IMG/VR virus record: IMGVR_UViG_3300021963_000021
Span: 1-64,000 of that record
Direction: 5' to 3' (one strand)
DNA: 64,000 nucleotides
Under the pieces are notes generated by a model that ran no database searches, was not told the DNA's origin, and saw nothing but the letters and a program-made list of their open reading frames with translations. This document shows positions 43,865 to 60,485 of the stretch, piece by piece (the first letter of the stretch is position 1; every line of letters begins with the position of its first letter). Both the position numbers and the translations under genes were made by a program.

Positions 43865-44118
43865 GTGTGTTGTCTATAAAAAATAATCCTCAATTTCAAA
43901 AGGATCTTGATCGATTCACAGAAGTTATAAATCAGCTTGATGGTGTCAAAAAGAATGAAGCTGAAAAACTGTTAAAAAGATTTATAGAGGCTATAAAAAG
44001 AATCGACGACACACTAGTAAATGTCAGTCTTGCTCCTGTTGATTATTCTTTTCACGTAGAAGCAAGAAGAGAACTAAAAAAGATTAGGCTCGATTTAGAA
44101 AATCTTTTACAGAAATAA
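43861..44118 (+). CDS. helical hypothetical protein
   Basis: 85-aa ATGA-coupled ORF. Confidence 0.65.
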   Translation: MSVLSIKNNPQFQKDLDRFTEVINQLDGVKKNEAEKLLKRFIEAIKRIDDTLVNVSLAPVDYSFHVEARRELKKIRLDLENLLQK

Positions 44119-44956
44119 ATCGATAATCGCCGATCACTGATTTTAATTTTTCTATATCAGCACAGGTATACTTTTGATATTGTCCTTCTAATTCGAAAGG
44201 AAACTCTATTTCTTTTATCGAAGCATCGTATTTCTTAGCAACAAGCTCAGCTACATCTTTAAAAGAAACTACTGCGCCTGTACCTAAATTGAATATGCCA
44301 CTGTGCCAATGGCCCACTGATAGTTTAATATTAACTATATCCTCTACGCAGATAAAGTCTCTTAGAAAATTCTCACTGCCTTTGAACACAAATACACTGC
44401 CTTCTACCTGCGCCTGTTGAGAAAACTTGTGTATAGGACTCGCCTGTGACCCTTTGTGCTTTTCACCGTTGCCGTAGACATTGAAGTATCTCCAGCCCTG
44501 TAACTTAGCTCTAGGGTTTTCTAATAATTTGATAGCTGTGTAGTAATCTATATCAGCTTTGCTTTGTGCGTACAAGGATCTAGGATCAAGAGGTTGATTT
44601 TCTTTAAAGCTCGGGCCGCTGCCATACACACTGGCAGAGCTAGCATATGACAAAAGAAAATCATGCTCGATTGCTTTATCTATAAGAAAAAATGTAGGAT
44701 TTTTATTTTTTCTTTGTATTAGATTTTTATCACGCTCTGTTGTACTAGATATCGCACCTTCGTGATATACTACTTCAACTGTGTGCCACTGATTGAAATT
44801 GTTATAGAACTCGTCAACAGTATGCCATTCAGAATAGGCCAGTTCTATATTAGCACGAGCATCATCGACACAGATAATGTCAGTGCGTCCTAGAGCATTT
44901 AATCCACGAACTAGATTAGATCCTATAAATCCTGCTGCGCCAGTGACTACAATCAT
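44084..44956 (-). CDS. hldD: ADP-L-glycero-D-manno-heptose 6-epimerase
   Basis: IVVTGAAGFIGSNLV, GAISSTTE, YASSASVYG, YAQSK, RYFNVYG..E.HKG.QAS. Confidence 0.9.
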   Translation of the reverse strand: MIVVTGAAGFIGSNLVRGLNALGRTDIICVDDARANIELAYSEWHTVDEFYNNFNQWHTVEVVYHEGAISSTTERDKNLIQRKNKNPTFFLIDKAIEHDFLLSYASSASVYGSGPSFKENQPLDPRSLYAQSKADIDYYTAIKLLENPRAKLQGWRYFNVYGNGEKHKGSQASPIHKFSQQAQVEGSVFVFKGSENFLRDFICVEDIVNIKLSVGHWHSGIFNLGTGAVVSFKDVAELVAKKYDASIKEIEFPFELEGQYQKYTCADIEKLKSVIGDYRFISVKDFLNRA

Positions 44957-45444
44957 CCCAGTGTCTGCTCCAACCAAGTCTTACAATTAGGCCAACTTCT
45001 GTAAATGTGTGCCCTACCACCAGCTCTAATCCATTCTTCGCAGTTACTATTGCGATCGTCAATTAAAATGTCACCTGGTTCTCTACAGTGCATGTATTTT
45101 TCGTAACTGTAAGGGCCAAGAAACACAGGTATGTGTGGAAAATGTTCTTGTGCCCAAAATACTTTATCCTGAGGTGCCCAGGGCATGTCGTTGCCTTTGG
45201 GAATAGCACTGAGAAAATAGAGACCGCAGCCTGTAATTGATTTATATGTTGTTACCCAATTGACTAATTCATATGCGCCTTCTTTGATTGGAAGTTTGCT
45301 GTACATACGCTGATCATCTTTGAGCCTACGCCAAGTTGAGTCAGGTAAAAGGTCACCGTCTTTAAACAAAGGTGCTTTTAGATAATCTCTAGCGTAGCCA
45401 TACCAATCAGCTACAACATCATCCATGTCTAGATATATGTTCAT
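44953..45444 (-). CDS. HAD-family phosphatase (5'(3')-nucleotidase-like)
   Basis: YLDMDDVVAD, DK..W, ILIDD..SN..EW..AGG. Confidence 0.8.
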   Translation of the reverse strand: MNIYLDMDDVVADWYGYARDYLKAPLFKDGDLLPDSTWRRLKDDQRMYSKLPIKEGAYELVNWVTTYKSITGCGLYFLSAIPKGNDMPWAPQDKVFWAQEHFPHIPVFLGPYSYEKYMHCREPGDILIDDRNSNCEEWIRAGGRAHIYRSWPNCKTWLEQTLG

Positions 45445-45833
45445 GATTTTTCTGCGTTTTCAAAAATCTGTTTCTGACTGTCACCTGGGATAATTCTGTA
45501 ATTGTCCTCTACACTGTCAGCAGTACTGACTTCAAACAGCATGGCATTGTCTGTTAATGCTTCTAGTTGGTGCGGCTGTAATGGAGGGTTATGCCATGTG
45601 TCGCCTTCGCTGAGATCTTTTTCAAACAGCACCGCACGTTCTGTATCTATCCAACGGACTTTAAACTTGCCGCTGTTAACAAACCATGTTTCGTCTTTGT
45701 CTTTATGGAAGTGCATAGAAAATTTATTTCCTGCCTTAGTAAAGCACAGTATTTTTCCGCAGTATTTTTCGTTGGTGGCAAATATTAATTCGTATCCCCA
45801 GCCTTTTTCTTGATAACCTTGTAATTGTGTCAT
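45441..45833 (-). CDS. cupin-fold sugar isomerase-like protein
   Basis: KGWG.E, SMHFH..KDET, PH, EVST...EDNYR..PGD. Confidence 0.82.
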   Translation of the reverse strand: MTQLQGYQEKGWGYELIFATNEKYCGKILCFTKAGNKFSMHFHKDKDETWFVNSGKFKVRWIDTERAVLFEKDLSEGDTWHNPPLQPHQLEALTDNAMLFEVSTADSVEDNYRIIPGDSQKQIFENAEKS

Positions 45834-46579
45834 TTTATTTCCTCTATTTTTGGAGCATAACAACCTACGTGCTGTACTGTTATTGACGCAGCGTTGTTGG
45901 CAAATTCTACTGCCGTTTTAATTTCTTTTGTTTCTAGATACATGTAGGCTAACGCAGATAAAAAAGTATCGCCTGCGCCTGTAACATCAACTACTTCAAC
46001 TGAGGGAGCAGGGGAAGAAATGTCATGATGCTTTATTATTGCGCCTTTAGCACCTTTGGTAACTATCAGTCCTGTACATTCAGATTTGATTTTACTATAT
46101 TCTAATTCATTGATCTTAACCCATGCGCCTTGTAATCGTTCTAGATCTGTTTTCTTTGTGTCAACAAACACAGGAATTCTAGTAGCTATGGCTTCCTCAA
46201 TAACATCGTAGGATACCGTACCTTTGTCGTAGTCGCTGATAACAATAGCATCATAGACTTTAGGTATTGCTGTCACAAACTCAATTGGGGTTGAGCTGGC
46301 ATCATTGTCTATTCTAACAATCTGTTGTTTACTGCGTATATCTATCAAGCGTGTCTTGGTTGAGCAGTCGCCGTGTAAGAAGTTAACTTCGCAGCCCAGT
46401 GCTTCTAGATTACGAGCAACATTGCCGGCCATACCTGGTTTTTGTTCTTCATGACTAAACTTAAACACAGGCACAGGTGCTTCCGGACTGATGCGATCCA
46501 CAGTGCCGTATTGATATATGTCAAGACAATTATCGCCGATCAATAATATCTTGTATCTTTTTTGTTGTTGAATAACCAT
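45830..46579 (-). CDS. D-glycero-D-manno-heptose-7-phosphate kinase (HldA/RfaE domain I, PfkB family)
   Basis: RISPEAPVP, GMAGNVA.N, SDYDKG, DVTGAGDT. Confidence 0.9.
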   Translation of the reverse strand: MVIQQQKRYKILLIGDNCLDIYQYGTVDRISPEAPVPVFKFSHEEQKPGMAGNVARNLEALGCEVNFLHGDCSTKTRLIDIRSKQQIVRIDNDASSTPIEFVTAIPKVYDAIVISDYDKGTVSYDVIEEAIATRIPVFVDTKKTDLERLQGAWVKINELEYSKIKSECTGLIVTKGAKGAIIKHHDISSPAPSVEVVDVTGAGDTFLSALAYMYLETKEIKTAVEFANNAASITVQHVGCYAPKIEEIK

Positions 46580-46925
46580 CGATTCTTTCAAAAAATTCTA
46601 TCCTTTTACAGACCTCTTCGCCTACTATAGGTTTTCCCTGCCAATCGGCACCCTTGACCATTACATCACAGTCTGCGATAAGATTTCTTAATTCGGTATC
46701 TGTTTCGAAAACTTTAACATCTGATACAGCTCTAAGGCTTTTTAACATTTTAGTACGTTCAAATTGATTATTAATTGGCCGACTGTGACCTTTTAATCTG
46801 CGTACACGCTCGTCAGAATCTATGCCCACGATTACCTCGTTACCGAGGCTCTGTGCGTATTCTAATAGTTCAATGTGTCCGACATGAAGTATGTCAAAGG
46901 TGCCATTCACAAAAACACGAGTCAT
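46530..46925 (-). CDS. heptose-1-phosphate nucleotidyltransferase (HldC/RfaE domain II)
   Basis: NGTFDILHVGH, LKG..RPIN...R, KGADW, GYSTT. Confidence 0.9.
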   Translation of the reverse strand: MTRVFVNGTFDILHVGHIELLEYAQSLGNEVIVGIDSDERVRRLKGHSRPINNQFERTKMLKSLRAVSDVKVFETDTELRNLIADCDVMVKGADWQGKPIVGEEVCKRIEFFERIDGYSTTKKIQDIIDRR

Positions 46926-46964
46926 ACTATATTTTAGTATAGTACGACCCGGTTTGTCAACGGA

Positions 46965-49900
46965 TTAGGCTTGCGCTTCTGCCCAACGTAGAATAATGTT
47001 AGCTGGTGTAGCTGTTCCAGATACCTTATACACGTTGATAGCCAAAACGTCTGGTCCGTTCGGGAATGTACCACGTCCGCCTAACGCAGTTGTAGTCAAT
47101 TCTTTAAGTTCGCCTAGGTTCAACGCATCAGTTGATCCTGGGTTTGTAATGAACGAGAAGATCGTTTCGCCCGGTAGCGCATATGGTGGTAAACCAAATT
47201 GGAACTGTACTGTGGTAGACCCTCCAGTAACCACAACGTTAGTAGTTTGTGTAAAGGTTACTGTATAATATGGCGTTCCTGAGAATGTCTGTAATGTGCT
47301 CACTGACTGTACACGAGTACCAGCAGGGAATTTGGTTTCAGTTGTGGCAACTTCAGTGTTAGCCGATGCTCCAGACGATTCCCACGATGCTTGTGTAAAG
47401 TAAATCGTAGAAGTGTTAGCAGTTGACTGTGCTAGCTGGAATGTGATGTTATTGGTGTTGCTAATTGCGCTGGTCGATGCTCTACTAAATGACAGTGTAT
47501 AATACAGTGTAGTATTAAATGTCACTGTTCCGCTAGCAGACACAACGGCTGTATTTCCTGCGTTAAATGTCACAGCATAATAACTAGTACCAGCAAATGT
47601 TCTCAGTGTGCTCACAGAGCTAATTTGAGTACCGCCGCCAAATTTAGCATCGTTAGTTGTCTGACCTGCGATAATATCAACAGGTAACGCAGCCCAACTT
47701 GACTGTTGGAAGAAGTGTATAGTATTTCCAATTGCTCTAGTACCAGCAAATCTAAATGATACTGTCGAGTTATTATTAACTTGACGGAGTGTTGATGTGC
47801 TAAAGCTCACGGTGTAAAACCCACCACTTGGGCCTGTTACTGCTGTAACATAAGTTCCATCAACAAACAACGACGTATCATTAGTAAAGATATCAGTAGC
47901 AGTAGTAGAACCTTGTAGTGCTGCCCACGAAGCCTGTAAGAAATATAACACATTGCTTGGAGCACCAATAGTAAACGCAGATACTGATGTTGATTGTAAT
48001 AATGGTAAAGTAGTTGCTGTTGGATTTGGGCTGTCTGTCTTGCCAGATACTGTAGTACCCGACGGAAACTTAACGTCATTAACAGATTGTCCTACCACGG
48101 CAGCAATGCTGTCCCAACTGGTTCTTGTCACATAAGCAATAGTAGTACCGCTAGATCTATTAAATGCTGCGCCAGTTGGCACAGTGGCATTACCAGTTAC
48201 AGTACCTAATGCTGTAGCAGTAGTAAATGTATACGAGCCACCACCTGCCCAGTTAACAGAACCGCCAGGAGCAATCTGTGCGAAGCTAGGCTGTCCACCT
48301 TGCGCTAGTCCGTTTAATTTACCCCAGGTAATATCTCCTGGGTTAGTTGGATAGTTTTGTGGATTCAACACACCTTCAATAACCACTCCGCCAGTGCCTG
48401 CGTCTGAAGCGATTGAAATCTCTTTCAATAACAACTGCGCTCTGTTTAACAGTTCACGCTCGCCTAGATCTCCAACAACAGCGTTAGACACGCTAGGTGC
48501 TAGTCGAATCAAGAACACAGTCTTTTTAGTAGTCGAAATTGAGTTACCAGTTGATGTATAACTGAATAGATAACCGCGGTCTTCGTCAAATCTACCGTCT
48601 GTCAAGAACGCAGAACCCCAGTGACTAATCAAAGGTGTTGTTGTATTTGTTAATAATATTACACCTGTTCTTGATGTATGTGATGTAGCTATACCTGCTC
48701 GGTAACTTCTTAACGCACCAGATTGATAGTTAGTTAACTGTGCTGCTCGAGTAGCGCCAGTTAAGGCTGTCGCTGTTTTACCTGAGTAACTGATTAATTC
48801 ATTATCGACATAAACTACACCCGTGTCTGGATAGAACTGAGTGTCTTCAATAGGAATAGTTGTGTCTAAGGCAGTTATGTCAGCAGTTAGTCTTTCAGCT
48901 GGGCCATAGTTAGCTACCTCGTATCGCACTGGCAAGTTACCAGTTCTCATGAACGCTTCTGAGTTCACGTTACTGTTACGCATACGATGAGCAAAAACAA
49001 AGTTACCATCTCCGCCACGTAGCATAAAGTCAATAAATCCAGCACCGTACCAAGTATATTGGATACCGATCATCTGCATTTTTGTAATATCAACATCGTA
49101 GCCGCTAGGACCGGTACCGTCTAGTCTGTCTCTATTGAACTGACTCTGAGGGACACGTTTATCAAACACCAAACAGATCTTAGTTCCGCTGACTGCGCTG
49201 ACTCCTCTGAAGTCTGGATTCACAGTCATTGAAGTGTTAGATGCTACCGCCGTGACTACGTGAGTCATTCCCTTAACTACCACAAAGTCGCCTGCTTTGA
49301 CTTGATCTAAGAATCGAGAGTTACTACCAGTTATGGTATTACTACCAGGCAATATAGAAATCGTGCCAGCTAGCTGCTTGGTAGCAGTTCTTTGTACAAC
49401 TGCTAGTTCAGTGCCGTTATATTCCCAAAACACACCGTTTTGATCATCAAACGCACCTGCTCTAACTACTGCGCCTTTCCAATTTAACGTTGATACCTGA
49501 CAGCTGAATCCTAGTGTTGGAATTTTTGAACCTAATCGTCTAACTGCCTTAACTCGGAACACTCGTTCACTGACAATTTCGTCAACTGTGTAATCTTCAC
49601 CAGGATAAAATTCATTACCACTGTCATATCCTGGAGTATCTACTCCAGTGATACGCACCACAGCACCTGCTTGGAATCCGTGATCGTTTTCGTCTAGAGT
49701 AATTGTTATAGTAGAACCGACTTCCACTCCATCAGAGACAATATTCTGTATGTCGTAACTAGGGGCAAATAGCGCACCGGTGGTGTACATCATGCCTTTA
49801 CCAGATTGGTAACGAATGTATTTTTTACTTTGACGTATTGCCTGTACACCGTGCTGCGGACCGCCTGTGCCTAGTTGTACACCACCGTCGAAGGGTCTAT

Positions 49901-52900
49901 GTGTAAAGAAGCTGTCTGGTCTAGCATAGACTCTACCAGTAATAGTGCCAGCAATAGTACCCGATGCTCTGGCCTGATAGCTTAGAGCTGTTGCTGTTGG
50001 TATTGAAGTTGCTGTATATGATCCGCCGGCAAGTGTATGATTGTTAGAACCGTTGTCTGAAGATGGCACAACAATAAAGGCTCCGCCCGGTGGTATACCA
50101 TGCGCTGCTAAGAAATCTATACGTATCGTTGCCAACGCAGCATACGTCAATGTCGTTGATGAAGGCACAGCTCCTGTTGTGAATTCACTGACAGTGATTG
50201 CTGAATACAGCGAGAATGTAGTACCTGCTGAAGCAGTATGCGATCCTACAGTTATGTTAACAACTCCGCCTAGGGTAACATTTGAAACAGTTAGAACAAC
50301 ATCGTTAGTTGGACTTGCGCCACCAAGGGTAGCACCTGATAACTGTATCTTATTACCGATGTAATAATTAGTCCCGCCAGTTGCTGCTACTACAGAACTG
50401 TATGCGCTGCTAGATCTTGTTAGATTAAATGTTGCTCCGTTGCCTCTAGAAGCTGTGTTTGTTCCAGCCACTCCTGTGTAGGTAATTTGATAACTGGCAG
50501 TTCCAGAAACGCTAGCTTCTGTAATCGCGCCAGACTGGTTACTTGCTGCGCCTGTTACAGAGAAGTTTGTTATACCGCCAGTGACATTAGCTGCTGTCAC
50601 TGTGATTGTTAAATCGTTGGCTGTTGTTGAACCACCTAACTGTGTACCGTAGATCGTTAATGTATCTGCGGAATTATAACCAGATCCTGGGTTTGTTAGA
50701 GTCACAAAATATTCAGTGCCGTTCCTGATAACAGTAAATGTCGCTGCTGACCCAGTACCAGAAGTCAGGTCTTGAATAATGCTAGTGTAAGTAGCTGAAA
50801 CTTTAGATACTGTAATAGTAGCGTTATTTGACGGTGTTGATCCGTAGGTAAATGTTGTCCCAGGAACTGTAAACGATTCACCTGCTGAATAATTTGAACC
50901 GGCAGTGGTAACGTTAACTGTATAAGCGTTGCTGCGAGTTATTGAAAACACAGCACCTGTGCCTGCTGCCGAAGTTGTATAAACAGTGCTATCAATGCCA
51001 GTTACTGTTTGATTAGCAATGGCAAGAGCTGTTCCTTGGATCACTGTCACGGCTGAGATAGCACTGCCTGATAATGTTTCAACGTTTAGATACAGGTCGT
51101 TGGCTGTGGATGTTCCACCGAGATCTGTACCTAGTATTACGATAGTGTCACCAACAGCGTATCCGGATCCTCCGGCATTAACTGTTACTGTAGAATAGTT
51201 AGTAGTGTTATCTCGCAAGACATTAAATGTTGCGCTAGATCCTGTGCCTACAACGTTAGTACCTGCTATACCTAGATAGTTAACATTATTACCTTTGATG
51301 CTAGCAGTCAAAGGATCTGTAAACACTAATGTAAGGCCCTGTATATCCGAAATGAATATGTTATTACCTGATCCGTCGTTGACTGCTAGACCAATTTGTA
51401 CACCGACTGTGCTGGTCACATCAACTTGTGTAGTTCCAGAAGGATAATCGGCGGTCAATAAAGGTGTTGTCACAACACCTCCAGTACCAAGCACTGAAGT
51501 TATCTGTGAACCTACACCGAGATTCGTACCGGTTATAGGAGCACCAATTTCTGGTGCTGTGCCTGTGAACGCAAATCTATTAGAACCACTCGGTGCTGCT
51601 AATGATGTTGTCACTGTACCGCTAGTACCGTTGCTGATAACGGAAAATGTTGGTGTACCAATTTCAGCACCAGTATAAAAACCGCCTTGACGTACCTGTG
51701 AAAATGCTGTGGCCAATGCTGTGGGATTGCTCGATCCTACTCGTGCTTTGGCATAGTATGTAAATGATTTAGTAGTCGGTACTGAAGTAACAATAAATGA
51801 CCCCTCAGCACGTGAAACTCCACTGATAGCCTGAGTAAGACCTCTCACAGTAATAGGCTGACCAACAGCAAATCCGTGTACAGCGTTTGTCGTTACTGTA
51901 ATCAAACTGCCGCCGATGCCACTGGTGCCCACTGACGCATCTGAAACAATGCTAACTATATCTTGATCAGTACCCGGGACTTCATAGATACTTGGATATC
52001 CTCTCGCTACTGCGATAGCCTGCCACTTGGTTGGCTGTAAGCCGTATTCAAAGTCAGCGTCAAGCATGGCCTGCGGCGGAGCAACACGCATACGTTCAAT
52101 AGCATCTGTGCCAAAGTCGTATGGACGTACTGACATATCTTTGGTTTCTACAAATATCTGTATCTCATCATCTTCGGTCATTGAAGATGTGTCACAGTTT
52201 AATTTAATAGTCGTTACACCGTCAGTGGCCTGTAAGAATTTTACAAAGTCCTCGTCTTCAACAGTCTCTTGTGTAACGGTTCCGCCGATAGCAGGATTAG
52301 AGAAATTATAAATGATTACGTTTGCGGTCGTGTTTGTGATCAATAATAGATCATCACTACCAGCTTTACCTTGGAATTTAATTCTACCATAGGTGTTTGG
52401 AATTGCTGCTGCTAACAAGCTCAGACCGCCAGGAATAACAGTTAACACTATATTAGATAGTTCTACAATTCTCGCGGCAGCTCCTGCTTCTGGAGATCCA
52501 GTCAATACAACCTGAGGTGTAGATGTCTGGTATGGTACAGTTCTATATGAAGGATACGAAGGCAACGAACTAGTGCCAACCAACAATAGATTAATTAATA
52601 AATCCGATAACGCAGTGATTCGTGTTGTAGCACCTGTTTCAGCGAACGGAGATGTTCTAACCTGAGCATAGGTATTCTGGAATGACGGAGCAGCTATACC
52701 TGTTAAAATATAGTTGTTTATAGTGTTTCTTAAAAACGTATGAGCATAAGCTTCTGGATATCTATCGCCGTCAACTTGTGCTTCGTTTCCATAATAGTAT
52801 TTTGATACAACACGATATGTTTCTTCATTTCCATTGTATTGTAAGTCATAGATGTATGCGTCGATAACATAACCGGAATCTCTAATACACTTAGCACTGT

Positions 52901-54791: not shown

Positions 54792-54800
54792 TTTTCTCTC

Positions 54801-55352
54801 TTAGGCTCCAAACGCTACCGCAAAAGCGACAACGGAATTGTCTACATAATCTTTTCTTGCCGGATTGGCTGCTAATGTAGGAACAGGGATTAGCATACCA
54901 TCGACAAATGTCACTATACCACTTATATCTGCCCCAGACGCTGAAATTTCAGCGTTGTCAGCATTTAAACTTCCTGGGGAGACACCATTACTTACCACAT
55001 CTATTTGGTAGGCCGTGACCTGTCCTGGCGTTAGTGTACCAATATCTACATTATTAATAGTTCCTCTGGTCAAGCTGTTAATAACTACACGACCAGAAAC
55101 AACTGAAACTCTGTTTACCCCACTGCTTCTTAAATATACATCGCCATTAGTTTGTAACTGAGACAACACACCTATAGTTTCAAGGCTGCTGTTTTTAATT
55201 GTGTTGCTAAGGGCAGTTAAATCAGTTGAGAATGGATTGCCATAAGAACCTATGCTGAGAGTATTTGCGGTAAGATTACCGTTCTCATCAACATAGAACC
55301 CTGGACTTTTAAATCCAAAATCTGACTTTAATGTTTTTTGTCCTACAGTCAT
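54801..55352 (-). CDS. short fibre-like virion protein
   Basis: TINNVDIG, ARKDYVD motifs typical of fibre shafts; late box 55366-55371. Confidence 0.6.
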   Translation of the reverse strand: MTVGQKTLKSDFGFKSPGFYVDENGNLTANTLSIGSYGNPFSTDLTALSNTIKNSSLETIGVLSQLQTNGDVYLRSSGVNRVSVVSGRVVINSLTRGTINNVDIGTLTPGQVTAYQIDVVSNGVSPGSLNADNAEISASGADISGIVTFVDGMLIPVPTLAANPARKDYVDNSVVAFAVAFGA

Positions 55353-55368
55353 AGTTTATCCAGAGTAT

Positions 55369-56922
55369 TTATAGCCTGCCCACAACCACTTCTATAACGC
55401 CTTCGACGCCATCAAAGTTTTCTAGAGCCTTGCCGATTACGGTTCCGACTTTTGGGTCACTTGAAGGTCTAGCATATCCACCACCACTTGCGACCATCAT
55501 ATCACCTTTGTGGATTTTTCCTCGAACTTTACATGGCACACGCCCTTGTAATGCCAACGGAACTACATGTTTGCCTTCTAAATGACCATTCATTAAATGC
55601 GCAGGCTGTGTAGAAACAATGCCTGCTACACGTCTTGTTTCGTCTGATGCTACGGTTACTTCATAGTCTCCGCCAAATTCTAATACTGTTCCGGGTTCGT
55701 AGGCAGCATCTGCCAAATAATTTTCTGCCAAGTCCGCCCATTGTGCTTGTGTTGATGTAACTGTAAGAACATCAGTTGCTGTATTCAATGTCACTGTGCT
55801 CTTAGCATAAAGAGACTGCCCAGATACAGAGTCTGTTCCTGTAGAAAGCACCAACGGATATGAGCCAGTACTAACAGCCTGTACAATTACAGCCTGTGCT
55901 GTTCCGCCACTTCCGCCTCCACCACCAGAGGACGAAAAGGTTATAGTATCAGAAGCAGCATTGGTAGTAATAGTCATGCCTGTGCCTGCTACAAATGTCA
56001 ACGTGTCACTTGCTCTTTCAGCTATGACATTGGATTGTCCAGATACCGCAATAGTAGTAAAAGAATTACCAGAAGATACTGTTCCGCCACCTCCGCTGCT
56101 AGATCCGCTGCTGCCTGTGTTGGTAATAGTAATTGAATCCGTCAATGGATCTGTAATAATACTGATTCCAGTACCGGCAACTAGTGTAACTCTATCATTT
56201 GGTGTTTCGGCTACTACATCAGATTCGCCTGCTACAGATATTTTATTAAAATAGGTAAATGCCTGACCACCTATAGTCGAACCTGCGGGTACTTCTATGG
56301 CATTTGAACCTGTGCTAGATATTACTGCGCCATTTAGATTTAACACACCACCTAGGTATAAATTGTCCCAAGGTGCTGCTGCGGTCCCAAGATCGTGAAC
56401 AAATCCTAAATCTGGAATTATATCTCTGTCAACAGCGCCTAGATTTATAGTCGAACCACCTCCAGATATAGGAGGTCCACCTGGTGTTGGGTCAGGTACT
56501 AAAAAGGTAGGACTCTGAGGACGCTCAATGGCATTAAGAACTCCAGAGTAATGTGCTCTATATATGGCTTTCAGACCGTTGTAGTCAGCAATTTTTGGTG
56601 ATAGTTTCAGTGACAGATAACTGTCGTTGACTTCTACAGACACATCAACTAATTCGTCATCAATAGCTACACGACCAACAATAGAATAGTTGGCATAATC
56701 GGGTCTAGCTACAACTAGGACTTGAAGTGTTTCTTTTTTGTTAGAATTAAATTCTAAAGAAATTTGATAGCTAGCACTGGCAAAGTCGCCTACATACCAG
56801 CGATCAATTTCAGTAGAATCAAAGATTTGAATCCAGGGCCCTTTGTGGAGAAAATTGACCCCATTTTTAAACTGTAGGGTATTTTTTACATTAGGTATAA
56901 AATAATTGTTAAAATCGGTCAT
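55369..56922 (-). CDS. tail fibre protein with C-terminal chaperone/peptidase-like domain
   Basis: Duplicated IAVSGQS.V.A....DTLT.VAGTG repeat; ADLAENY...GRVPCKV...IGKALE C-terminus. Confidence 0.8.
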   Translation of the reverse strand: MTDFNNYFIPNVKNTLQFKNGVNFLHKGPWIQIFDSTEIDRWYVGDFASASYQISLEFNSNKKETLQVLVVARPDYANYSIVGRVAIDDELVDVSVEVNDSYLSLKLSPKIADYNGLKAIYRAHYSGVLNAIERPQSPTFLVPDPTPGGPPISGGGSTINLGAVDRDIIPDLGFVHDLGTAAAPWDNLYLGGVLNLNGAVISSTGSNAIEVPAGSTIGGQAFTYFNKISVAGESDVVAETPNDRVTLVAGTGISIITDPLTDSITITNTGSSGSSSGGGGTVSSGNSFTTIAVSGQSNVIAERASDTLTFVAGTGMTITTNAASDTITFSSSGGGGGSGGTAQAVIVQAVSTGSYPLVLSTGTDSVSGQSLYAKSTVTLNTATDVLTVTSTQAQWADLAENYLADAAYEPGTVLEFGGDYEVTVASDETRRVAGIVSTQPAHLMNGHLEGKHVVPLALQGRVPCKVRGKIHKGDMMVASGGGYARPSSDPKVGTVIGKALENFDGVEGVIEVVVGRL

Positions 56923-56966
56923 AGCTCGCTCGGGGTTATTATGTATTTAACAGATTTTATCCATAA

Positions 56967-56993
56967 TAAAAAACCCCCTTGCGGGGGTCTTTA
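56967..56993 (-). terminator. intrinsic terminator
   Basis: ACCCCC-GCAA-GGGGGTTTTTT. Confidence 0.88.
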
Positions 56994-56994
56994 A

Positions 56995-58821
56995 TTAGCT
57001 ATTTGCTATTTTTACCAACTTACCGTATTCTGGCAAGTATAGGTATTCAATATCGCTGCGTACTAGCGTATCTATAGCATCATCTAGTGTTTCTACTAGT
57101 GGGTCGCCACCTAAATTAAAGCTGGTGTTAAACAAGATAGGAATACCTGTTTCTTCTTTGAATGCTTTGATTAGATCATAGTAATGTTTGTTTTGCTCTT
57201 GTGTAACTGTCTGTATACGACAAGTGCCATCAACGTGAATAATACTTGGGATCTTTTCAGCAATACCGGGCTTACAATTTACAGCATACATCATGTGAGG
57301 GCTTGAACCCATTCCTCGCAGATCAAACCACTCATGAACATCGTCTTGTAGAATAGATCCTGCGAAGGGTCTAAAATACTCGCGACGTTTGACCATGTTT
57401 ACGAAGTCTTTTCCATCTTCAAAAGTTGGATCAAAAAGCACACTTCTGTTACCAAGTGCTCTAGGACCGTTCTCACTGCGTCCTTGGAAAATAGTAACAA
57501 TATTTTTTTCACGCAACAATTTAACAACATCTTTATGTGTAGCATCAGTCATTGTTCCGTCTGCAAACTTAACTTTTTCTTCTATTTCATCGACAGTGTA
57601 GATCTGTTCTGGGCCAAGATACAGCGTATCTAACTTGTGAACAGTCATGTTATCATCTAAAGCATGCCAGAACATCAAAGCAGCACCCATAGCAGTACCA
57701 GCATCATTGGAAATTGGTTCTACATAAATTTCGATGCCGTCTTTTTCTAAATGTTCTAGATAGAAATAATTGGCCACACAGTTTAGGCCGTAGCCGCCAC
57801 TGATAACTACACGCTTCTTGCCGCTCATTGCTGAGGCTTTACGAATCAAATTCAGTACCTGTTCCTGTGTCTGAGTTTGTACAGCATAGGCCAAGTCTCT
57901 TCTATTCTGTAGTGTAGTCACATCAGTTTTTTCATCTGTAGGATTTTCATCTAAGAATTCAAACATATCTGCGTTAACTGTAGAACTTGACGGATACATT
58001 GGTATGATCAAATTTCTATTTGACACAGGAAACTTTGCGTTAGATTCAAACAGCGGAGGAATCTTATCGTTAGGTTTACCATATGGAAATAGTCCCATAG
58101 TTTTTCCAGCTTCGATAGCTGAAAATCCACAGTACTCAGTTACACCTTCGTAGGTCTTAACAATGCCAGCACGGTCTGTTACCCATGCTTCGTGTGTTTC
58201 GCCCTGTTCACCAAATTGGTCAGAAGCTAACTTGTCATAATACTGCGCAGGAATACCTTCTCTAGTTCCATAGTGTTTATACAATGTTTTAAACTGTGAA
58301 GGATAGTTACAGTCAACAATAGATTCTACTTCATACGACCATATCTGTTGTCCGTTAAATGACAGTGGAATAAAAGTTCCTGCTCCGTCAACAATAAGTG
58401 CTACAGCATCTTCCCATCCTGAACGATAAAACGCACAGGCAGCATGTAGTTTGTGATGCATAAAGCTGAGATCAATAATCTGTGGGTGATTATAGATATT
58501 GGCTTTACGATCAATTAATCCCATCTTACGAGCTAGACCAGTATAGACATCGTCACCGGTATAGTCGACTCTGCCAGCTGTGTCGCCAAGTTTTTGTGTG
58601 TGAGCAATGATCAAATAATCTAACTTGTCTGTATATTCTAAAATTTTCATTATAGACGCATACGGACCGCCGTCATACTTGTGTCTTGTTAGTCGTTCTT
58701 CCTCAATAGAAAATACGATTTCACCATCTTTTAATAAGCAAACACCAGCATTATGGCCACGAGCTACGGCTGCGATCCAACCGCTTTTTAATCTTGGAGT
58801 TAAATCTTGTTGTTCGTTCAT
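56995..58821 (-). CDS. carbamoyltransferase (NodU/CmcH family), full length
   Basis: EEERLTR.K, HHKLHA, DGAG, GKTMGL, GPRALGNRS, KRREYFRPFA, HVDGT.R.Q, NTSFN. Confidence 0.93.
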   Translation of the reverse strand: MNEQQDLTPRLKSGWIAAVARGHNAGVCLLKDGEIVFSIEEERLTRHKYDGGPYASIMKILEYTDKLDYLIIAHTQKLGDTAGRVDYTGDDVYTGLARKMGLIDRKANIYNHPQIIDLSFMHHKLHAACAFYRSGWEDAVALIVDGAGTFIPLSFNGQQIWSYEVESIVDCNYPSQFKTLYKHYGTREGIPAQYYDKLASDQFGEQGETHEAWVTDRAGIVKTYEGVTEYCGFSAIEAGKTMGLFPYGKPNDKIPPLFESNAKFPVSNRNLIIPMYPSSSTVNADMFEFLDENPTDEKTDVTTLQNRRDLAYAVQTQTQEQVLNLIRKASAMSGKKRVVISGGYGLNCVANYFYLEHLEKDGIEIYVEPISNDAGTAMGAALMFWHALDDNMTVHKLDTLYLGPEQIYTVDEIEEKVKFADGTMTDATHKDVVKLLREKNIVTIFQGRSENGPRALGNRSVLFDPTFEDGKDFVNMVKRREYFRPFAGSILQDDVHEWFDLRGMGSSPHMMYAVNCKPGIAEKIPSIIHVDGTCRIQTVTQEQNKHYYDLIKAFKEETGIPILFNTSFNLGGDPLVETLDDAIDTLVRSDIEYLYLPEYGKLVKIANS

Positions 58822-59762
58822 TTCTTATGTTTTCCTAAAACAGCATCAACGACATAATCTATAATTTCAGGCGTCATTGACATTAGATTTTCATGCTTTC
58901 TATCTATACGTTCGTCCATTGTAATACGTATAGGGCTGTATTCACGCAGTTCTTCGCCCATGTCTAATACATTAAAGTTTTTGGCATTAGGATATGAAAC
59001 GTTTATAGGATAGGTAGAACCAAATACCACAGTTGATGGCTTATCCATTGCGTAGGCCAAGTGCTGGCCTAGACTATCACAACCTAAGAAATGATCTGCG
59101 TATTTGATTACAGCAGCCCATTGACGTATACTGATATTTTCAGGGAACGCAATTTCATCTTTGATAGTTTTTTCTTGAGTTAGGTCTAGTTTTATTTCGC
59201 TCATCATTATTACAGCAAATCCTTTTTCCTGTAACTTCTGTATGATTTTCTTAACATCTTTGTATTCAATACTGCGAGCAGTTCTGTCTACAAACGATTC
59301 GTCGAGATATTCTATGCCTCTACCAAACGGCTGGAATACAATTACTTTTTCTTTTTTTAATTTCTTTTTAACTTCAGCAATTAGTTGACGACCGGCAATT
59401 AATTCATCCTTGCTGAGTCTCAACGTAGGTCTTGGTAATTCTCTAATACCCTGCTTGTTTAATTCGATATCAATGGCTTGGCTAATACTACATTTTTGAT
59501 TGTAATATTCCCAGACACGATACGGTTCAATTGTGTAGATATCTTTGTCTTTGAGTTTCTCTACGAACAGATTCTTGTGCCAAACGTCATAGGTTCTAGC
59601 ATCAAGGGTGGGGTGTCCTTTAAACACATCTGTGCCACCTTCGCAAACGATAATAAAATCTTTATCTCCGGACTCTTGTTCGTACTTTTCAAAAGCAGGT
59701 ACTGAACAAAGCATACGGCCTGCGCCGCCATTAATAAAGAATGCTTTAGAGCGTTTTTCCAT
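58818..59762 (-). CDS. GT9-like (ADP-heptose-type) glycosyltransferase
   Basis: GGAGR, VFQPFG, IKYADHFLGCDSLGQHLA, STVVFGST. Confidence 0.7.
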   Translation of the reverse strand: MEKRSKAFFINGGAGRMLCSVPAFEKYEQESGDKDFIIVCEGGTDVFKGHPTLDARTYDVWHKNLFVEKLKDKDIYTIEPYRVWEYYNQKCSISQAIDIELNKQGIRELPRPTLRLSKDELIAGRQLIAEVKKKLKKEKVIVFQPFGRGIEYLDESFVDRTARSIEYKDVKKIIQKLQEKGFAVIMMSEIKLDLTQEKTIKDEIAFPENISIRQWAAVIKYADHFLGCDSLGQHLAYAMDKPSTVVFGSTYPINVSYPNAKNFNVLDMGEELREYSPIRITMDERIDRKHENLMSMTPEIIDYVVDAVLGKHKK

Positions 59763-59769
59763 TTATACT

Positions 59770-59830
59770 CCAAGAAAATAGGTTCTGTGTACTATGTATC
59801 AAACAATAATAACACAGAACCTATTCTTGG
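59770..59830 (-). promoter_or_regulatory. RBS-overlapping hairpin with late-promoter-like GATACATA in its loop
   Basis: 14-bp perfect inverted repeat 59777-59790 / 59812-59825, extended by CCAAG/CTTGG. Confidence 0.6.
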
Positions 59831-59840
59831 TTCAAGTATT

Positions 59841-60485
59841 TTAATAGAAAGTTGGTAAGTCGCTTGGGAAAGGAATCTTCCAGTGATCTACATCAGCATA
59901 TGTAGTTTCAAGGTTTTGTAGCCATTCTAAATGGTCTTCCATTTTTTGAATGTCTTCAGCGGAATACATCATTTCTGCTGCGTGTGCCAATGATCTTTCT
60001 ACAGACTCAATTAGACTTGGGATTGAAGCTAAGAAACTTGCTCTTGAGTTTGCGTGTTCACGGAATCTCGGTCCAACAAATGCTCCGTTGATATATTTCA
60101 TATCGTTAGTCCAACGACATTGACCTAGCGCACCCTGTTTCTGATCATAATGGTATGTGTATGTTCCACCAGGTACTTCTTCTTCATACGTTGGAATTTC
60201 TTCTACATACTCGTACTGATTAGTTAGGTACGCACATTGATATGTGTATTCGTCTGCGTCAATTTTGTAAAAAGTAGTTGCTGGATCGTCATCAACTAAA
60301 TCTTCAAAATTTAAATCCGCCTCAGTTTCGGCTCGTCTAGCGATGTATTTTATCTCGCCAGTTGCGTCAATAACGCAAATAGCAAGGTATCTTGAACCGG
60401 TATAAACAGCATTCACTGTGTTATTGTTAACAGTGGTAGTCTTATATGGCTCATCTGGTAGTAAAAAAGTAAATGCTTTTCTCAT
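59841..60485 (-). CDS. putative tail fibre assembly/chaperone protein
   Basis: Acidic; C-terminal W...L...WKIPFP resembling Tfa-like ends; follows the Cys-rich genes. Confidence 0.5.
   Translation of the reverse strand: MRKAFTFLLPDEPYKTTTVNNNTVNAVYTGSRYLAICVIDATGEIKYIARRAETEADLNFEDLVDDDPATTFYKIDADEYTYQCAYLTNQYEYVEEIPTYEEEVPGGTYTYHYDQKQGALGQCRWTNDMKYINGAFVGPRFREHANSRASFLASIPSLIESVERSLAHAAEMMYSAEDIQKMEDHLEWLQNLETTYADVDHWKIPFPSDLPTFY

What the first reader, a model, noticed from the sequence alone, without database searches (positions are those of the whole stretch)
44084..60485. Candidate virion glycosylation system: heptose pathway, GT9-like transferase and carbamoyltransferase around Ser/Thr-rich fibres
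Seen: hldC-hldA-cupin-HAD-hldD lie directly downstream of the giant Thr/Ser-rich fibre gene. A GT9-like gene ATGA-coupled to a full NodU/CmcH carbamoyltransferase lies directly downstream of the Cys-rich fibre genes, behind a late-promoter-like box. Established: GT9 enzymes use ADP-heptose; bacterial AAH/TibC enzymes heptosylate Ser residues of adhesins; NodU-family enzymes O-carbamoylate sugars. Inference: the phage builds a carbamoylated, possibly methylated, heptose-containing glycan on its own fibres or sheath. The alternative is remodelling of host LPS for superinfection exclusion.
Basis: inference. Interest (0 to 1): 0.7.

Follow-up and report, generated by a model that had tools for sequence, protein, structure and literature searches.

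The report
Phage heptose glycosylation cassette beside fibres
A 364-kb aquatic jumbo phage carries, inside its tail-fibre gene block, a full set of genes to make ADP-heptose, attach it with a GT9-fold transferase and carbamoylate it; the most likely target is the phage's own fibres, which would be a new kind of virion glycosylation, but the target is not shown.

Summary
On the minus strand of 44084-60485 lie an HldC-like nucleotidyltransferase, an HldA-like kinase, a cupin, a HAD phosphatase and an HldD-like epimerase. Four of the five are joined by ATGA overlaps. A GT9-fold transferase is ATGA-coupled to a two-domain O-carbamoyltransferase. All of these are interleaved with fibre genes. The block is orthologous and syntenic to T4-GC302-308 of T4-like cyanophages, whose pathway genes were called 'LPS genes' of unknown use, while the sheath and capsid resemble jumbo phages. 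New here: the GT9-like protein defines a small phage family. Its members sit next to tail-fibre genes in five unrelated phage groups. In 78 of 78 assessable viral contigs a carbamoyltransferase follows it; one TAG-recoded phage has a sulfotransferase instead. The cupin resembles a type II phosphomannose isomerase and probably replaces GmhA. The family keeps donor-site residues of WaaC but lacks its catalytic Asp13. Metatranscriptome contigs cover GT9+CT as one unit. The chemistry, a carbamoyl-heptose transferred from ADP-heptose, is well supported. The acceptor is inferred: tail fibres about 0.45, host envelope about 0.3. The 'late-promoter box' at the GT9 start overlaps the ATG and cannot serve that gene.

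The parts
46530..46925 (-). HldC-like heptose-1-phosphate adenylyltransferase (131 aa)
   Evidence: PF01467 at 3.7e-17. Best NCBIfam match is TIGR02199 rfaE_dom_II at 1.4e-32, 112 bits, below the cut-off of 181. 41-52% identical to cyanophage T4-GC304.
45830..46591 (-). HldA-like heptose-7-phosphate kinase (PfkB; likely start ATG at 46579)
   Evidence: Best NCBIfam match is TIGR02198 rfaE_dom_I at 1.2e-50, 172 bits, below the cut-off of 345. 38-44% identical to T4-GC305. Stop codon overlaps the cupin start as ATGA.
45441..45833 (-). Metal-binding cupin resembling type II phosphomannose isomerase; proposed sedoheptulose-7-P isomerase (stand-in for GmhA)
   Evidence: Cupin_2 at 5.8e-8, with weak MannoseP_isomer and GMP_PMI hits. 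HxH..E..H motif. hhalign to the PMI cupin of the window's own NT-PMI fusion gives probability 74.6, E 2.7e-5. Orthologue of T4-GC307, which travels with the kinase, NT and epimerase in every module seen. No SIS GmhA in the genome.
44953..45444 (-). HAD phosphatase of the NT5C family; proposed heptose-1,7-bisphosphate 7-phosphatase (stand-in for GmhB)
   Evidence: PF06941 at 8.6e-6. DMDDV motif I. ATGA-coupled on both sides. It occupies the place that in cyanophages holds the ~110-aa 'phosphoheptose isomerase' GC306, which has no SIS domain and resembles the PNKP phosphatase domain.
44084..44956 (-). HldD-like ADP-glycero-manno-heptose 6-epimerase
   Evidence: 38% identical to E. coli RfaD/HldD over 298 aa, E 6e-54. 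TIGR02197 at 241 bits, below the cut-off of 274.6.
46931..46960 (-). Sigma-70-like promoter TTGACA-18-TAAAAT just before the NT start codon
   Evidence: Best match (11 of 12) in the 20 kb scanned. Same layout as other TTGACA..TAxAAT sites 5-6 nt before an ATG in this genome. In run X7 depth rises from about 7 to 38 across it. Function is inferred.
46918..46951 (-). 14-bp hairpin with a T-run at the giant-gene/NT junction, enclosing the NT start codon
   Evidence: Terminator-like site found; sequence.
46965..54791 (-). Giant 2608-aa virion/fibre protein, moderately Thr-rich
   Evidence: Residues 802-2608 are 41-45% identical to 'virion structural protein' of S-CAM1/S-CAM3 and weaker to S-PM2, Syn1 and others. 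Ser+Thr 22.1%. No Pfam hit.
54801..55352 (-). 183-aa protein preceded by a late-type box TATAAATA (55373-55366)
   Evidence: No family hit. Conserved after CT in relatives.
55369..56922 (-). 517-aa fibre-like protein preceded by TTAAATAC (56950-56943)
   Evidence: C-terminal match to phrog_6427, phrog_22593 and tail-fibre phrog_19602. Sequence.
56965..56988 (-). Intrinsic terminator after the carbamoyltransferase gene (ACCCCC-GCAA-GGGGGT followed by T6)
   Evidence: Sequence. RNA contigs of X6 and X7 end at 57057 and 56998.
56995..58821 (-). O-carbamoyltransferase of the NodU/CmcH/TobZ family (608 aa, both domains)
   Evidence: Carbam_trans_C at 1.2e-57 and Carbam_trans_N at 1.2e-26. Sequence matches to solved structures 7xb6, NovN, GdmN and TobZ at E 1e-55 to 1e-42. 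48-62% identical to cyanophage T4-GC303.
58818..59762 (-). GT9-fold glycosyltransferase (314 aa), predicted heptosyltransferase of a distinct phage family
   Evidence: PF01075 at 33.9 bits. Model pLDDT 94.8. The top 24 Foldseek PDB hits are all GT9-family entries (an uncharacterised V. parvula family-9 transferase, TibC, WaaC, WaaF) at E 1e-10 to 1e-8, while other GT-B folds score E>1e-5. R163, D229 and H234 align with WaaC K192, D261 and H266. WaaC Asp13 is not conserved.
59777..59825 (-). 14-bp perfect hairpin followed by a T-rich run, between the 214-aa gene and the GT9-like gene
   Evidence: Sequence. RNA contigs break here: the upstream contig ends at 59839 with adapter sequence, and the GT9+CT contig ends at 59759/59761 with adapter sequence.
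59841..60485 (-). 214-aa protein, possibly a tail-fibre assembly chaperone, preceded by a late-type box GATAAATAG (60509-60501)
   Evidence: phrog_9740. Feature-based neighbours carry Phage_tail_APC or Caudo_TAP at scores 0.86-0.88, which is a lead only. Box. A homologue lies about 700 bp upstream of the GT9-like gene in most relatives.
60508..63458 (-). Three paralogous Cys-rich (9-10%) and Gly-rich (17-20%) proteins of 320, 332 and 324 aa, probably fibre-tip proteins
   Evidence: Composition; sequences. phrog_4205. Feature search places them with Gly_rich_2 (PF21722) viral clusters at 0.95.

Best explanation
The interval holds a self-sufficient glycosylation cassette embedded in the phage's tail-fibre module.

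Step 1 (well supported). [quoted passage not shown] They are a PMI-like cupin acting as isomerase in place of GmhA, an HldA-like kinase, a HAD phosphatase in place of GmhB, an HldC-like adenylyltransferase and an HldD-like epimerase.

Step 2 (well supported for the donor). A GT9-fold transferase of a distinct phage family uses this donor.

Step 3 (inferred from gene coupling and from the Pseudomonas WapO precedent). The ATGA-coupled TobZ-type enzyme O-carbamoylates the transferred heptose.

Step 4 (inferred, about 0.45). The acceptor is Ser/Thr of the phage's own tail-fibre or receptor-binding proteins, modified in the cytoplasm during assembly in the manner of the TibC/AAH adhesin heptosyltransferases. 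The further glycosyltransferases elsewhere in the window may extend this glycan.
For: Gene identities.

Operon coupling: ATGA junctions.

One ancestral module: the genes are contiguous in P-SSM2 (T4-GC302-308) and syntenic in S-SSM7, S-CAM3 and Sf-FS3, always between fibre genes and the neck gene.

Link between transferase and heptose pathway:
- All cultured phages with the GT9-like gene have the epimerase.
- A 29%-identical family member in a TAG-recoded phage sits beside the same kinase-NT-cupin-GC306-epimerase set, next to a sulfotransferase.
- CT follows the GT9-like gene in 78 of 78 assessable IMG/VR loci.

Fold and donor site.

Link to fibres: family members with the same invariant residues lie next to tail-fibre genes in
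- this jumbo phage,
- T4-like cyanophages,
- Aeromonas myovirus HJ05,
- N4-like Vibrio podoviruses,
- a metagenomic phage where the domain is fused to a GT8 and follows three tail-collar proteins.
The Aeromonas and Vibrio phages show no sugar-pathway gene in the 7-kb flanks examined.

Against a canonical LPS acceptor:
- Marine Synechococcus WH8102 (host of carrier Sf-FS3) has LPS with neither heptose nor Kdo.
- The N-terminal domain does not align to WaaC and lacks Asp13.

No membrane or export component among the sugar genes.

Expression: RNA-library contigs cover GT9+CT as one piece, at depths like the neighbouring fibre-tip genes.

The fibre and glycosylation block is cyanophage-like, while the sheath and capsid are jumbo-phage-like. 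This suggests that fibres and enzymes moved together.
Against: - No glycan has been seen on any virion protein of any carrier.
- Adjacency to receptor-binding genes is also typical of the receptor-modifying (seroconversion) genes of temperate phages (own knowledge).
- In S-SM2 and P-TIM68 the same five pathway genes lie in large non-structural glycan clusters, with other transferases and without the GT9-like gene. That looks more like polysaccharide synthesis.
- The GT9-like gene has no consensus late box of its own. A sigma-70-like site precedes the pathway operon, so timing is undetermined.
- The giant protein is only moderately Ser/Thr-rich.
- The host of this phage is unknown and may have heptose-containing LPS.
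- The isomerase and phosphatase roles of the cupin and HAD rest on context and weak homology.
- RNA-library contigs cannot exclude DNA carry-over.
Confidence: 0.45

Rival explanations
1. Host-envelope remodelling. The cassette adds a carbamoyl-heptose to LPS core or another host surface glycoconjugate during infection. This would mask the receptor, either excluding superinfection or preventing loss of progeny on cell debris.
For: - This is the long-standing reading of the cyanophage orthologues as 'LPS genes'.
- GT9 enzymes with solved structures are mostly LPS heptosyltransferases.
- Heptose plus a GT9 enzyme plus a NodU-type carbamoyltransferase is the gene set that in Pseudomonas yields a carbamoylated inner-core heptose; the carbamoyltransferase role of WapO/PA5005 is described there as putative.
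- The pathway genes of S-SM2 and P-TIM68 sit in non-structural glycan clusters.
- Receptor-modifying genes often neighbour receptor-binding genes (own knowledge).
Against: - LPS of marine Synechococcus, including the host of a carrier phage, has neither heptose nor Kdo, so the canonical acceptors are missing.
- The acceptor domain is unlike WaaC and lacks its catalytic Asp.
- NCBIfam LPS heptosyltransferase models score 17-27 bits against cut-offs of 170-467.
- Lytic Aeromonas and Vibrio phages keep the gene inside the tail module.
- The window has no flippase, ligase or membrane protein.
Confidence: 0.3
2. Glycosylation of another phage protein, such as capsid, sheath, baseplate or a non-structural protein, rather than the fibres.
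For: - Same chemistry and cytoplasmic location as the best explanation.
- In mycobacteriophages the known targets are the capsid and tail-tube subunits.
- The sheath gene lies 5 kb away.
Against: The conserved neighbours across five phage groups are fibre or receptor-binding genes, not capsid or sheath genes.
Confidence: 0.1
3. Modification of phage DNA, or synthesis of a small heptose-containing metabolite.
For: - T4-like phages glycosylate DNA, and viral transferases hypermodify DNA with diverse glycans (cited).
- All solved relatives of the carbamoyltransferase act on small molecules.
Against: - The genome has no ThyA-family hydroxymethylase to create a 5-hydroxymethyl pyrimidine acceptor.
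- The gene sits in the tail module, not among replication or early genes.
- There are no biosynthetic scaffold genes nearby.
Confidence: 0.05
4. Non-functional cargo or 'stuffer' DNA, or a general metabolic helper with no specific acceptor.
For: Raised as a possibility for the cyanophage clusters.
Against: - Orthologues are kept at 40-60% identity with invariant catalytic-site residues across distant phages.
- At least 599 viral contigs carry the gene.
- The genes are tightly translationally coupled.
- RNA-library contigs cover them.
Confidence: 0.03

Closest known systems
TibC/AAH bacterial autotransporter heptosyltransferases (protein O-heptosylation of adhesins)
   Same: Both have a GT9-like GT-B fold; TibC chains rank among the top Foldseek hits at E about 1e-9. 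Both would take ADP-heptose as donor. Both would act in the cytoplasm on beta-rich adhesin-like proteins encoded next door.
   Different: The equivalog model TIGR04414 scores 15 bits against a cut-off of 200. This protein is 314 aa, against 371-390 residues in the TibC chains. No dodecamer or iron-finger features were examined. The neighbours are phage fibres, not autotransporters. Protein acceptor use is not shown here.
LPS inner-core heptosyltransferases WaaC/WaaF, with Pseudomonas WapO (PA5005) carbamoylation of HepII
   Same: Same fold and the same donor-site motif (R/K, D, H). The same trio of an ADP-heptose pathway, a GT9 enzyme and a NodU-family carbamoyltransferase gives an O-carbamoylated heptose in Pseudomonas.
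   Different: The N-terminal acceptor domain is not alignable and WaaC Asp13 is absent. Scores are far below the equivalog cut-offs. The genes are phage-encoded in a fibre module. Cyanobacterial hosts of the orthologues lack the Kdo and heptose acceptors.
Cyanophage 'LPS gene' set T4-GC302-308 (P-SSM2, S-SSM7, S-CAM1/3, Sf-FS3)
   Same: Orthologous at 38-62% identity, with the same order and the same position between fibre genes and the neck gene.
   Different: Here the carrier is a 364-kb jumbo phage whose capsid matches Rak2-like jumbo phages and whose sheath matches Atu_ph07-like ones, with no psbA, hli or CP12. A giant fibre gene splits the module. An NT5C-type HAD replaces GC306. In the literature GC302 is 'hypothetical', GC306 is called 'phosphoheptose isomerase', and the function is open.
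Mycobacteriophage virion glycosylation (Freeman et al. 2023, as cited in PMC12619734)
   Same: Phage-encoded transferases near structural genes put glycans on virion proteins.
   Different: Those phages infect actinobacteria, the targets are the capsid and tail-tube C-termini, the transferase families differ, and there is no phage-encoded nucleotide-sugar pathway, heptose or carbamoylation (as far as described and from own knowledge).
Temperate-phage seroconversion modules (gtrABC, oac)
   Same: These are phage sugar-modifying genes often placed next to the tailspike gene (own knowledge).
   Different: Those systems use membrane proteins acting on undecaprenyl-linked sugars or O-antigen in lysogens. 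Here all enzymes are predicted soluble and the phage looks lytic and T4-like.
Giant-virus self-encoded glycosylation of fibrils or capsid (Mimivirus, chloroviruses)
   Same: The virus encodes both the nucleotide-sugar pathways and the transferases that decorate its own surface fibres (own knowledge).
   Different: Those are eukaryotic viruses with different sugars and enzymes. The resemblance is one of logic only.

Membership tests
CAZy GT9 / Pfam Glyco_transf_9 heptosyltransferases | Pfam PF01075 match above the gathering score | tested here: met
   33.9 bits against a cut-off of 22, covering residues 171-264 only.
CAZy GT9 / Pfam Glyco_transf_9 heptosyltransferases | GT-B fold whose nearest solved neighbours are GT9 enzymes | tested here: met
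   Model pLDDT 94.8. The top 24 PDB hits are 3tov, TibC, WaaC and WaaF at E 1e-10 to 3e-8 with TM 0.5-0.67. Other GT-B folds score E>1e-5 with TM about 0.3.
CAZy GT9 / Pfam Glyco_transf_9 heptosyltransferases | C-terminal donor-site residues equivalent to WaaC K192, D261 and H266 | tested here: met
   hhalign pairs R163, D229 and H234 with them. These residues are invariant or nearly so in the family. The roles of the WaaC residues are from own knowledge.
CAZy GT9 / Pfam Glyco_transf_9 heptosyltransferases | N-terminal catalytic Asp (WaaC Asp13 in the 'SSMGD' loop) | tested here: not met
   The family has GGAGR at that loop, with G12, G13, G15 and R16 nearly invariant. The alignment was made by hand, anchored on the following Pro. 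hhalign did not align the N-domain.
CAZy GT9 / Pfam Glyco_transf_9 heptosyltransferases | Uses ADP-heptose as donor | not testable with these tools
   Supported only by repeated co-location with an ADP-heptose pathway.
LPS heptosyltransferase I/II/III equivalogs (WaaC, WaaF, WaaQ) | NCBIfam equivalog score above the cut-off | tested here: not met
   17-27 bits against cut-offs of 170-467.
TibC/AAH autotransporter O-heptosyltransferases | NCBIfam TIGR04414 above the cut-off | tested here: not met
   15.4 bits against a cut-off of 200.
TibC/AAH autotransporter O-heptosyltransferases | Protein Ser acceptor; dodecameric iron-containing assembly | not testable with these tools
   Only fold similarity was seen. 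No complex prediction was run.
ADP-L-glycero-beta-D-manno-heptose pathway (GmhA, HldA, GmhB, HldC, HldD) | HldD epimerase | tested here: met
   38% identity to E. coli HldD over its full length, E 6e-54. TIGR02197 is the best hit at 241 bits but below the cut-off of 274.6.
ADP-L-glycero-beta-D-manno-heptose pathway (GmhA, HldA, GmhB, HldC, HldD) | HldA kinase and HldC adenylyltransferase | tested here: inconclusive
   rfaE_dom_I and rfaE_dom_II are by far the best family hits (1.2e-50 and 1.4e-32), but both fall below the equivalog cut-offs. The kinase is shorter than the model.
ADP-L-glycero-beta-D-manno-heptose pathway (GmhA, HldA, GmhB, HldC, HldD) | GmhA (SIS-domain sedoheptulose-7-P isomerase) | tested here: not met
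   No SIS_2 match anywhere in the 364-kb genome. A PMI-like cupin is proposed as the replacement.
ADP-L-glycero-beta-D-manno-heptose pathway (GmhA, HldA, GmhB, HldC, HldD) | GmhB (HAD-IIIA heptose bisphosphate phosphatase) | tested here: not met
   No NCBIfam hit at all. The protein is an NT5C-family HAD with an intact DxD motif. Its role is inferred from ATGA coupling within the operon.
NodU/CmcH/TobZ O-carbamoyltransferases | Kae1-like N-domain plus YrdC-like C-domain in one chain | tested here: met
   Carbam_trans_N at 94 bits and Carbam_trans_C at 195 bits. Aligned to 7xb6, NovN, GdmN and TobZ at E 1e-55 to 1e-42.
NodU/CmcH/TobZ O-carbamoyltransferases | Identity with NodU itself (equivalog) | tested here: not met
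   NF041651 scores 141 bits against a cut-off of 1000. The protein belongs to the family but is not NodU.
Phage virion glycosylation systems | Glycan demonstrated on virion proteins | not testable with these tools
   Needs mass spectrometry of virions. No report was found in the searched literature.
Phage seroconversion (gtrABC/oac type) | Membrane-embedded transferase or flippase components | tested here: not met
   No 19-residue window reaches transmembrane-like hydrophobicity in any sugar gene of the window.

The most novel reading that the evidence does not exclude
A widespread, so far unrecognised family of phage GT9-fold heptosyltransferases, embedded in tail-fibre modules of myoviruses, jumbo phages and N4-like podoviruses, O-heptosylates the receptor-binding fibres. 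The sugar is then carbamoylated or sulfated. Where the host presumably makes no ADP-heptose, as in picocyanobacteria, the phage brings a complete pathway in which a PMI-type cupin and a small HAD replace GmhA and GmhB. This would be the first tail-fibre glycosylation system in phages of Gram-negative bacteria and cyanobacteria. It would also reinterpret the classic cyanophage 'LPS genes'.
Probability: 0.4. Interest if true: 0.8.

Novelty: new variant of a known kind. Interest (0 to 1): 0.66.

Why it matters
Cyanophage 'LPS genes' have been an open question since 2005, with explanations ranging from stuffer DNA to surface remodelling. If the cassette glycosylates receptor-binding fibres, it adds a layer to host-range determination, virion stability and escape from host or grazer recognition, in abundant aquatic phages: at least 599 viral contigs carry the transferase.

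It would also extend protein O-heptosylation, known only from bacterial autotransporter adhesins, to viruses. It would reveal non-orthologous replacements for two steps of the ADP-heptose pathway.

Cultured carriers make this directly testable: S-SSM7, P-SSM2, S-CAM1/3, Sf-FS3, Aeromonas HJ05 and Vibrio SBP1.

Tried and rejected
1. Megablast of the two gene groups against the phage collection found nothing. Only protein-level searches found relatives.
2. The T4 consensus TATAAATA is not enriched in the window: 3 found against 5 expected. The shorter ATAAATA is the enriched upstream word.
3. The TATAAATG at the GT9 start was rejected as its promoter because it overlaps the ATG.
4. P-SSM2 expression classes were sought in PMC6628666 and PMC7238727. 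These give only orthologue lists and qPCR of other genes. The relevant transcriptome paper is not in the library.
6. tblastn of a Cys-rich paralog against phages gave no match.
7. Several representative family members lie on contigs too short to give context.
8. Host inference: no psbA, hli or CP12 in the genome and no tRNA in the window. The host stays unknown.
9. Complex prediction was not used. An enzyme-substrate contact is transient, the candidate acceptors lack deep alignments, and a negative result would say nothing.
10. The DNA-modification idea was rejected mainly because the genome has no ThyA-family hydroxymethylase.
11. PMC12619734 ('moraphages') was checked as a possible description of this lineage. 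It is a different, non-T4 group.

Full report
**What the window is.** The window is the first 64 kb of a 363,943-bp virus record that CheckV rates as complete. The record has a T4-type major capsid gene. By blastn that gene is nearest to Rak2-like jumbo phages such as Serratia BF, Erwinia pEa_SNUABM_47 and Vibrio 2.275.O. Its tail sheath (35420-38800) is nearest to Atu_ph07, Phosso and other jumbo phages. The genome has no psbA, hli or CP12. Near-identical DNA occurs in marine, estuarine, riverine and freshwater metagenomes. The host is unknown.

**The observation.**
- The heptose group reads NT (46530-46925), kinase (45830-46591), cupin (45441-45833), HAD (44953-45444) and epimerase (44084-44956).
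- The last four are joined by ATGA overlaps, and the kinase overlaps the NT gene.
- The epimerase is 38% identical to E. coli HldD over its full length, E 6e-54.
- For the kinase and NT, the rfaE domain I and II models are by far the best family hits, though below the equivalog cut-offs.
- The GT9-like gene (58818-59762) overlaps the start of a 608-aa two-domain carbamoyltransferase by ATGA.
- That carbamoyltransferase aligns to the solved O-carbamoyltransferases 7xb6, NovN, GdmN and TobZ at E 1e-55 to 1e-42.

Some details need correcting.
- The giant protein has 22% Ser+Thr against a genome background of 14%.
- A 214-aa protein that is not Cys-rich separates the Cys/Gly-rich paralogs from the GT9-like gene.
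- The genome has no SIS-type GmhA.
- The TATAAATG at the GT9 gene overlaps its ATG.

**The two gene groups are one module.**
- In Prochlorococcus phage P-SSM2 the orthologues are contiguous: GC302 (GT9-like, annotated 'hypothetical'), GC303 (CT), GC304 (NT), GC305 (kinase), GC306, GC307 (cupin) and GC308 (epimerase).
- S-SSM7, S-CAM3 and Sf-FS3 have the same order with a few insertions. The module always lies between tail-fibre genes and the neck gene gp13.
- Identities to the window proteins are 38-62%.
- The giant protein's C-terminal 1800 residues are 41-45% identical to a 'virion structural protein' that lies just after the module in S-CAM1/3.
- So the whole fibre-plus-sugar block is cyanophage-like in a jumbo-phage backbone. 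In the window the giant gene and two small genes have come to lie between CT and NT.

**Co-occurrence.**
- All cultured phages with the GT9-like gene also have the HldD-like epimerase.
- Two phages, S-SM2 and P-TIM68, have the five pathway genes without the GT9-like gene, inside larger non-structural glycan clusters.
- At least 599 IMG/VR contigs encode a relative. Among the 80 best, 78 have CT within 0.9-2.9 kb downstream. The other two end before it could appear.
- A 29%-identical family member on a TAG-recoded phage contig is flanked by a sulfotransferase on one side. On the other side lie kinase, NT, cupin, a GC306-like protein and an epimerase.
- The logic is therefore: donor pathway, plus GT9-like transferase, plus an enzyme that decorates a sugar hydroxyl.

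**The pathway has two non-orthologous steps.**
- The cupin has the HxH..E..H metal motif and weak PMI hits.
- It aligns to the PMI cupin of the window's own NT-PMI fusion protein (23697-24458) with probability 74.6, E 2.7e-5.
- Converting fructose-6-P to mannose-6-P is the hexose analogue of converting sedoheptulose-7-P to glycero-manno-heptose-7-P. A PMI-type cupin is therefore a chemically sensible stand-in for GmhA. This step is inference.
- The cyanophage protein annotated 'phosphoheptose isomerase' (GC306, about 110 aa) has no SIS domain. It resembles the phosphatase domain of polynucleotide kinase.
- In the window an NT5C-family HAD with an intact DxD motif sits in its place, ATGA-coupled on both sides.
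- I read both as the bisphosphate phosphatase step. This is also inference.

**The transferase.**
- The family is small: 431 representatives at the 50% clustering level.
- A model built on 54 diverse members has pLDDT 94.8.
- Its best PDB matches are all GT9 enzymes: a Veillonella GT9, TibC, WaaC and WaaF. They are well separated from other GT-B folds.
- Profile alignment to E. coli WaaC covers only the C-terminal domain. It pairs R163, D229 and H234 with K192, D261 and H266.
- The N-terminal, acceptor-side domain does not align.
- At the loop where WaaC has SSMGD13, the family has a nearly invariant GGAGR16.
- The donor site therefore looks conserved. The acceptor side and the general base do not.
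- The protein fails the equivalog models for both the LPS enzymes and TibC/AAH.

**Where family members sit.** Besides the jumbo phage and five cyanophage genera, members with the same invariant residues are found in three further contexts.
- In Aeromonas myovirus HJ05 the gene lies between a tail-fibre gene and the sheath gene.
- In N4-like Vibrio podoviruses it lies between 'tail fiber' and 'tail family' genes.
- On a metagenomic contig it is fused to a GT8 domain and follows three tail-collar-domain proteins.

The Aeromonas and Vibrio phages show no sugar-pathway gene in the 7-kb flanks examined. Their hosts make ADP-heptose for LPS (own knowledge). The cyanophages carry the pathway, and the LPS of marine Synechococcus WH8102 and CC9311 contains neither heptose nor Kdo. 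WH8102 is the host of the carrier Sf-FS3. This pattern fits an enzyme whose acceptor is supplied by the phage and whose donor is supplied by whichever partner can make it.

**Transcription signals.**
- Two words are enriched upstream of genes genome-wide. One is ATAAATA (46 genes against 2.7 expected), which lies before giant structural ORFs and head-region operons. The other is GGTTGACA with TATAAT.
- Late-type boxes precede the 214-aa gene, the 183-aa gene and, in variant form, the 517-aa gene.
- A 14-bp hairpin with a T-run separates the 214-aa gene from the GT9-like gene.
- A canonical terminator follows CT.
- The best sigma-70-like site in 20 kb, TTGACA-18-TAAAAT, lies 5 nt before the NT start codon.

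**Metatranscriptome contigs.**
- In metatranscriptome runs X6 and X7, single contigs span 57057-59759 and 56998-59761. That is GT9+CT and nothing else, with adapter sequence at the 59761 end in X7 and at the 59839 end of the upstream contig in X6.
- Their depths are 22.6 and 49.5. The fibre-tip and 214-aa genes show 26 and 48-100, and the 517-aa gene shows 5-10.
- The pathway operon and the giant gene are covered at lower depth. In X7 depth steps up at the NT gene.
- Uneven depth across adjacent genes argues for RNA rather than DNA carry-over, but the tool warns that this is not proof.
- Timing within infection cannot be read from these data.

**Weighing the acceptors.** In favour of the fibres:
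- the recurrent position of the gene beside fibre genes;
- the mosaic transfer of fibres and enzymes as one block;
- soluble enzymes with no export parts;
- the missing LPS acceptors in cyanobacterial hosts;
- the divergent acceptor domain;
- the precedent of GT9-fold enzymes that heptosylate adhesins.

In favour of the host envelope:
- the Pseudomonas inner core, where a heptose carries an O-carbamoyl group attributed to the putative carbamoyltransferase WapO;
- the non-structural clusters of S-SM2 and P-TIM68;
- the known habit of receptor-modifying genes to sit beside receptor-binding genes (own knowledge).

DNA modification is unlikely without a hydroxymethylase. My estimates are fibres about 0.45, another phage protein about 0.1, host envelope about 0.3 and the rest about 0.1. 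The searched literature contains no report linking a phage heptosyltransferase to fibre glycosylation.

**Verdict.** The genes are already annotated in cyanophages, so the parts are known. Four things are new. The 'hypothetical' GC302 is recognised as a GT9-fold family tied to tail-fibre modules across phage types. Its pairing with a carbamoyl- or sulfotransferase is near-invariant. The pathway is re-read with a PMI-like isomerase and HAD phosphatases. And the cassette is found in a jumbo phage. This is a new variant of known kinds (virion glycosylation, protein heptosylation), with a testable and fairly surprising prediction.

Noticed in passing
window 16462-24458: A second large glycan gene set. 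It holds a GT2, a GT25, an FkbM methyltransferase, a GT25-SDR epimerase fusion, a GT32-like protein, two unknowns, a GT8 and a nucleotidyltransferase fused to a PMI cupin. GC content is low (34-39%). Late-type ATAAATA boxes lie 11-12 nt before the first genes of both arms (16462 on the plus strand, 24458 on the minus strand). It may extend the same glycan.
   Followed up: partly
window 7470-8426 (-): A 318-aa protein with only the Kae1-like Carbam_trans_N domain (112 bits) sits between a DnaB-like helicase (6039-7469) and a Toprim/primase-like gene (8509-9504). This is an odd place for a carbamoyltransferase-like gene. It recalls the short 'Nol' genes of S-SSM7 and Sf-FS3.
   Followed up: no
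whole genome; e.g. window 39913-40677, 23697-24458, 8509-9504, 46925: Many genes have the late-type box only 11-12 nt before the ATG (13 genes), or a TTGACA-N17/18-TAxAAT promoter ending 5-6 nt before the ATG. This suggests leaderless or nearly leaderless mRNAs. The RNA contig of GT9+CT also ends at the start codon.
   Followed up: partly
window 1-6000: The first 6 kb have much higher GC (46-51%) than the rest (34-44%). They carry several strong early-type promoters (TTGGTTGACA-N17-TATAAT) about 56-61 nt before short ORFs.
   Followed up: no
window 44084-63833 versus 35420-43460 and genome 91917-93095: The genome is a mosaic. Fibre and sugar genes have their best relatives in T4-like cyanophages. 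The sheath and capsid have theirs in Atu_ph07-like and Rak2-like jumbo phages. Yet the genome lacks the cyanophage signature genes psbA, hli and CP12.
   Followed up: partly
window 60508-63458 (-): Three tandem paralogs have 9-10% Cys and 17-20% Gly and share a GAGGSGARMCCCG motif. They have no Pfam hit and no tblastn hit in cultured phages. By language-model features they resemble Gly_rich_2 viral proteins.
   Followed up: partly
L024 (Logan contig SRR19664650_49844): This phage contig has genes that translate only with TAG read as Gln. It carries a methyltransferase, a sulfotransferase, a GT9-like gene and the five heptose-pathway genes next to a ClpP-type protease.
   Followed up: partly
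L001, L002, L005, L012, L013 (cyanophage records): The ~110-aa cyanophage protein annotated 'phosphoheptose isomerase' (T4-GC306, phrog_1238) has no SIS domain. It resembles the PNKP-type HAD phosphatase domain. The neighbouring 'cysteine dioxygenase' (GC307) is the PMI-like cupin. Both annotations look wrong.
   Followed up: partly
L001, L002, L005, L006 (cyanophage GT9-like genes): The cyanophage GT9-like proteins carry an extra 60-100-residue C-terminal tail, rich in Pro/Gln and ending in Lys-rich sequence. The jumbo-phage protein lacks it.
   Followed up: no
L006 (Sf-FS3), L001, L002: Several 2OG-Fe(II)/prolyl-4-hydroxylase-like genes are interleaved with the module in Sf-FS3, S-SSM7 and P-SSM2. 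This may point to further protein modification in the same gene neighbourhood.
   Followed up: no
window 46965-54791, N-terminal 800 residues: The N-terminal third of the giant protein has no cyanophage match. It contains a motif of the form Y-x-x-D-L-R/Q-Y-x-G-N/T-E repeated three times, near residues 110-125, 275-290 and 685-700.
   Followed up: no
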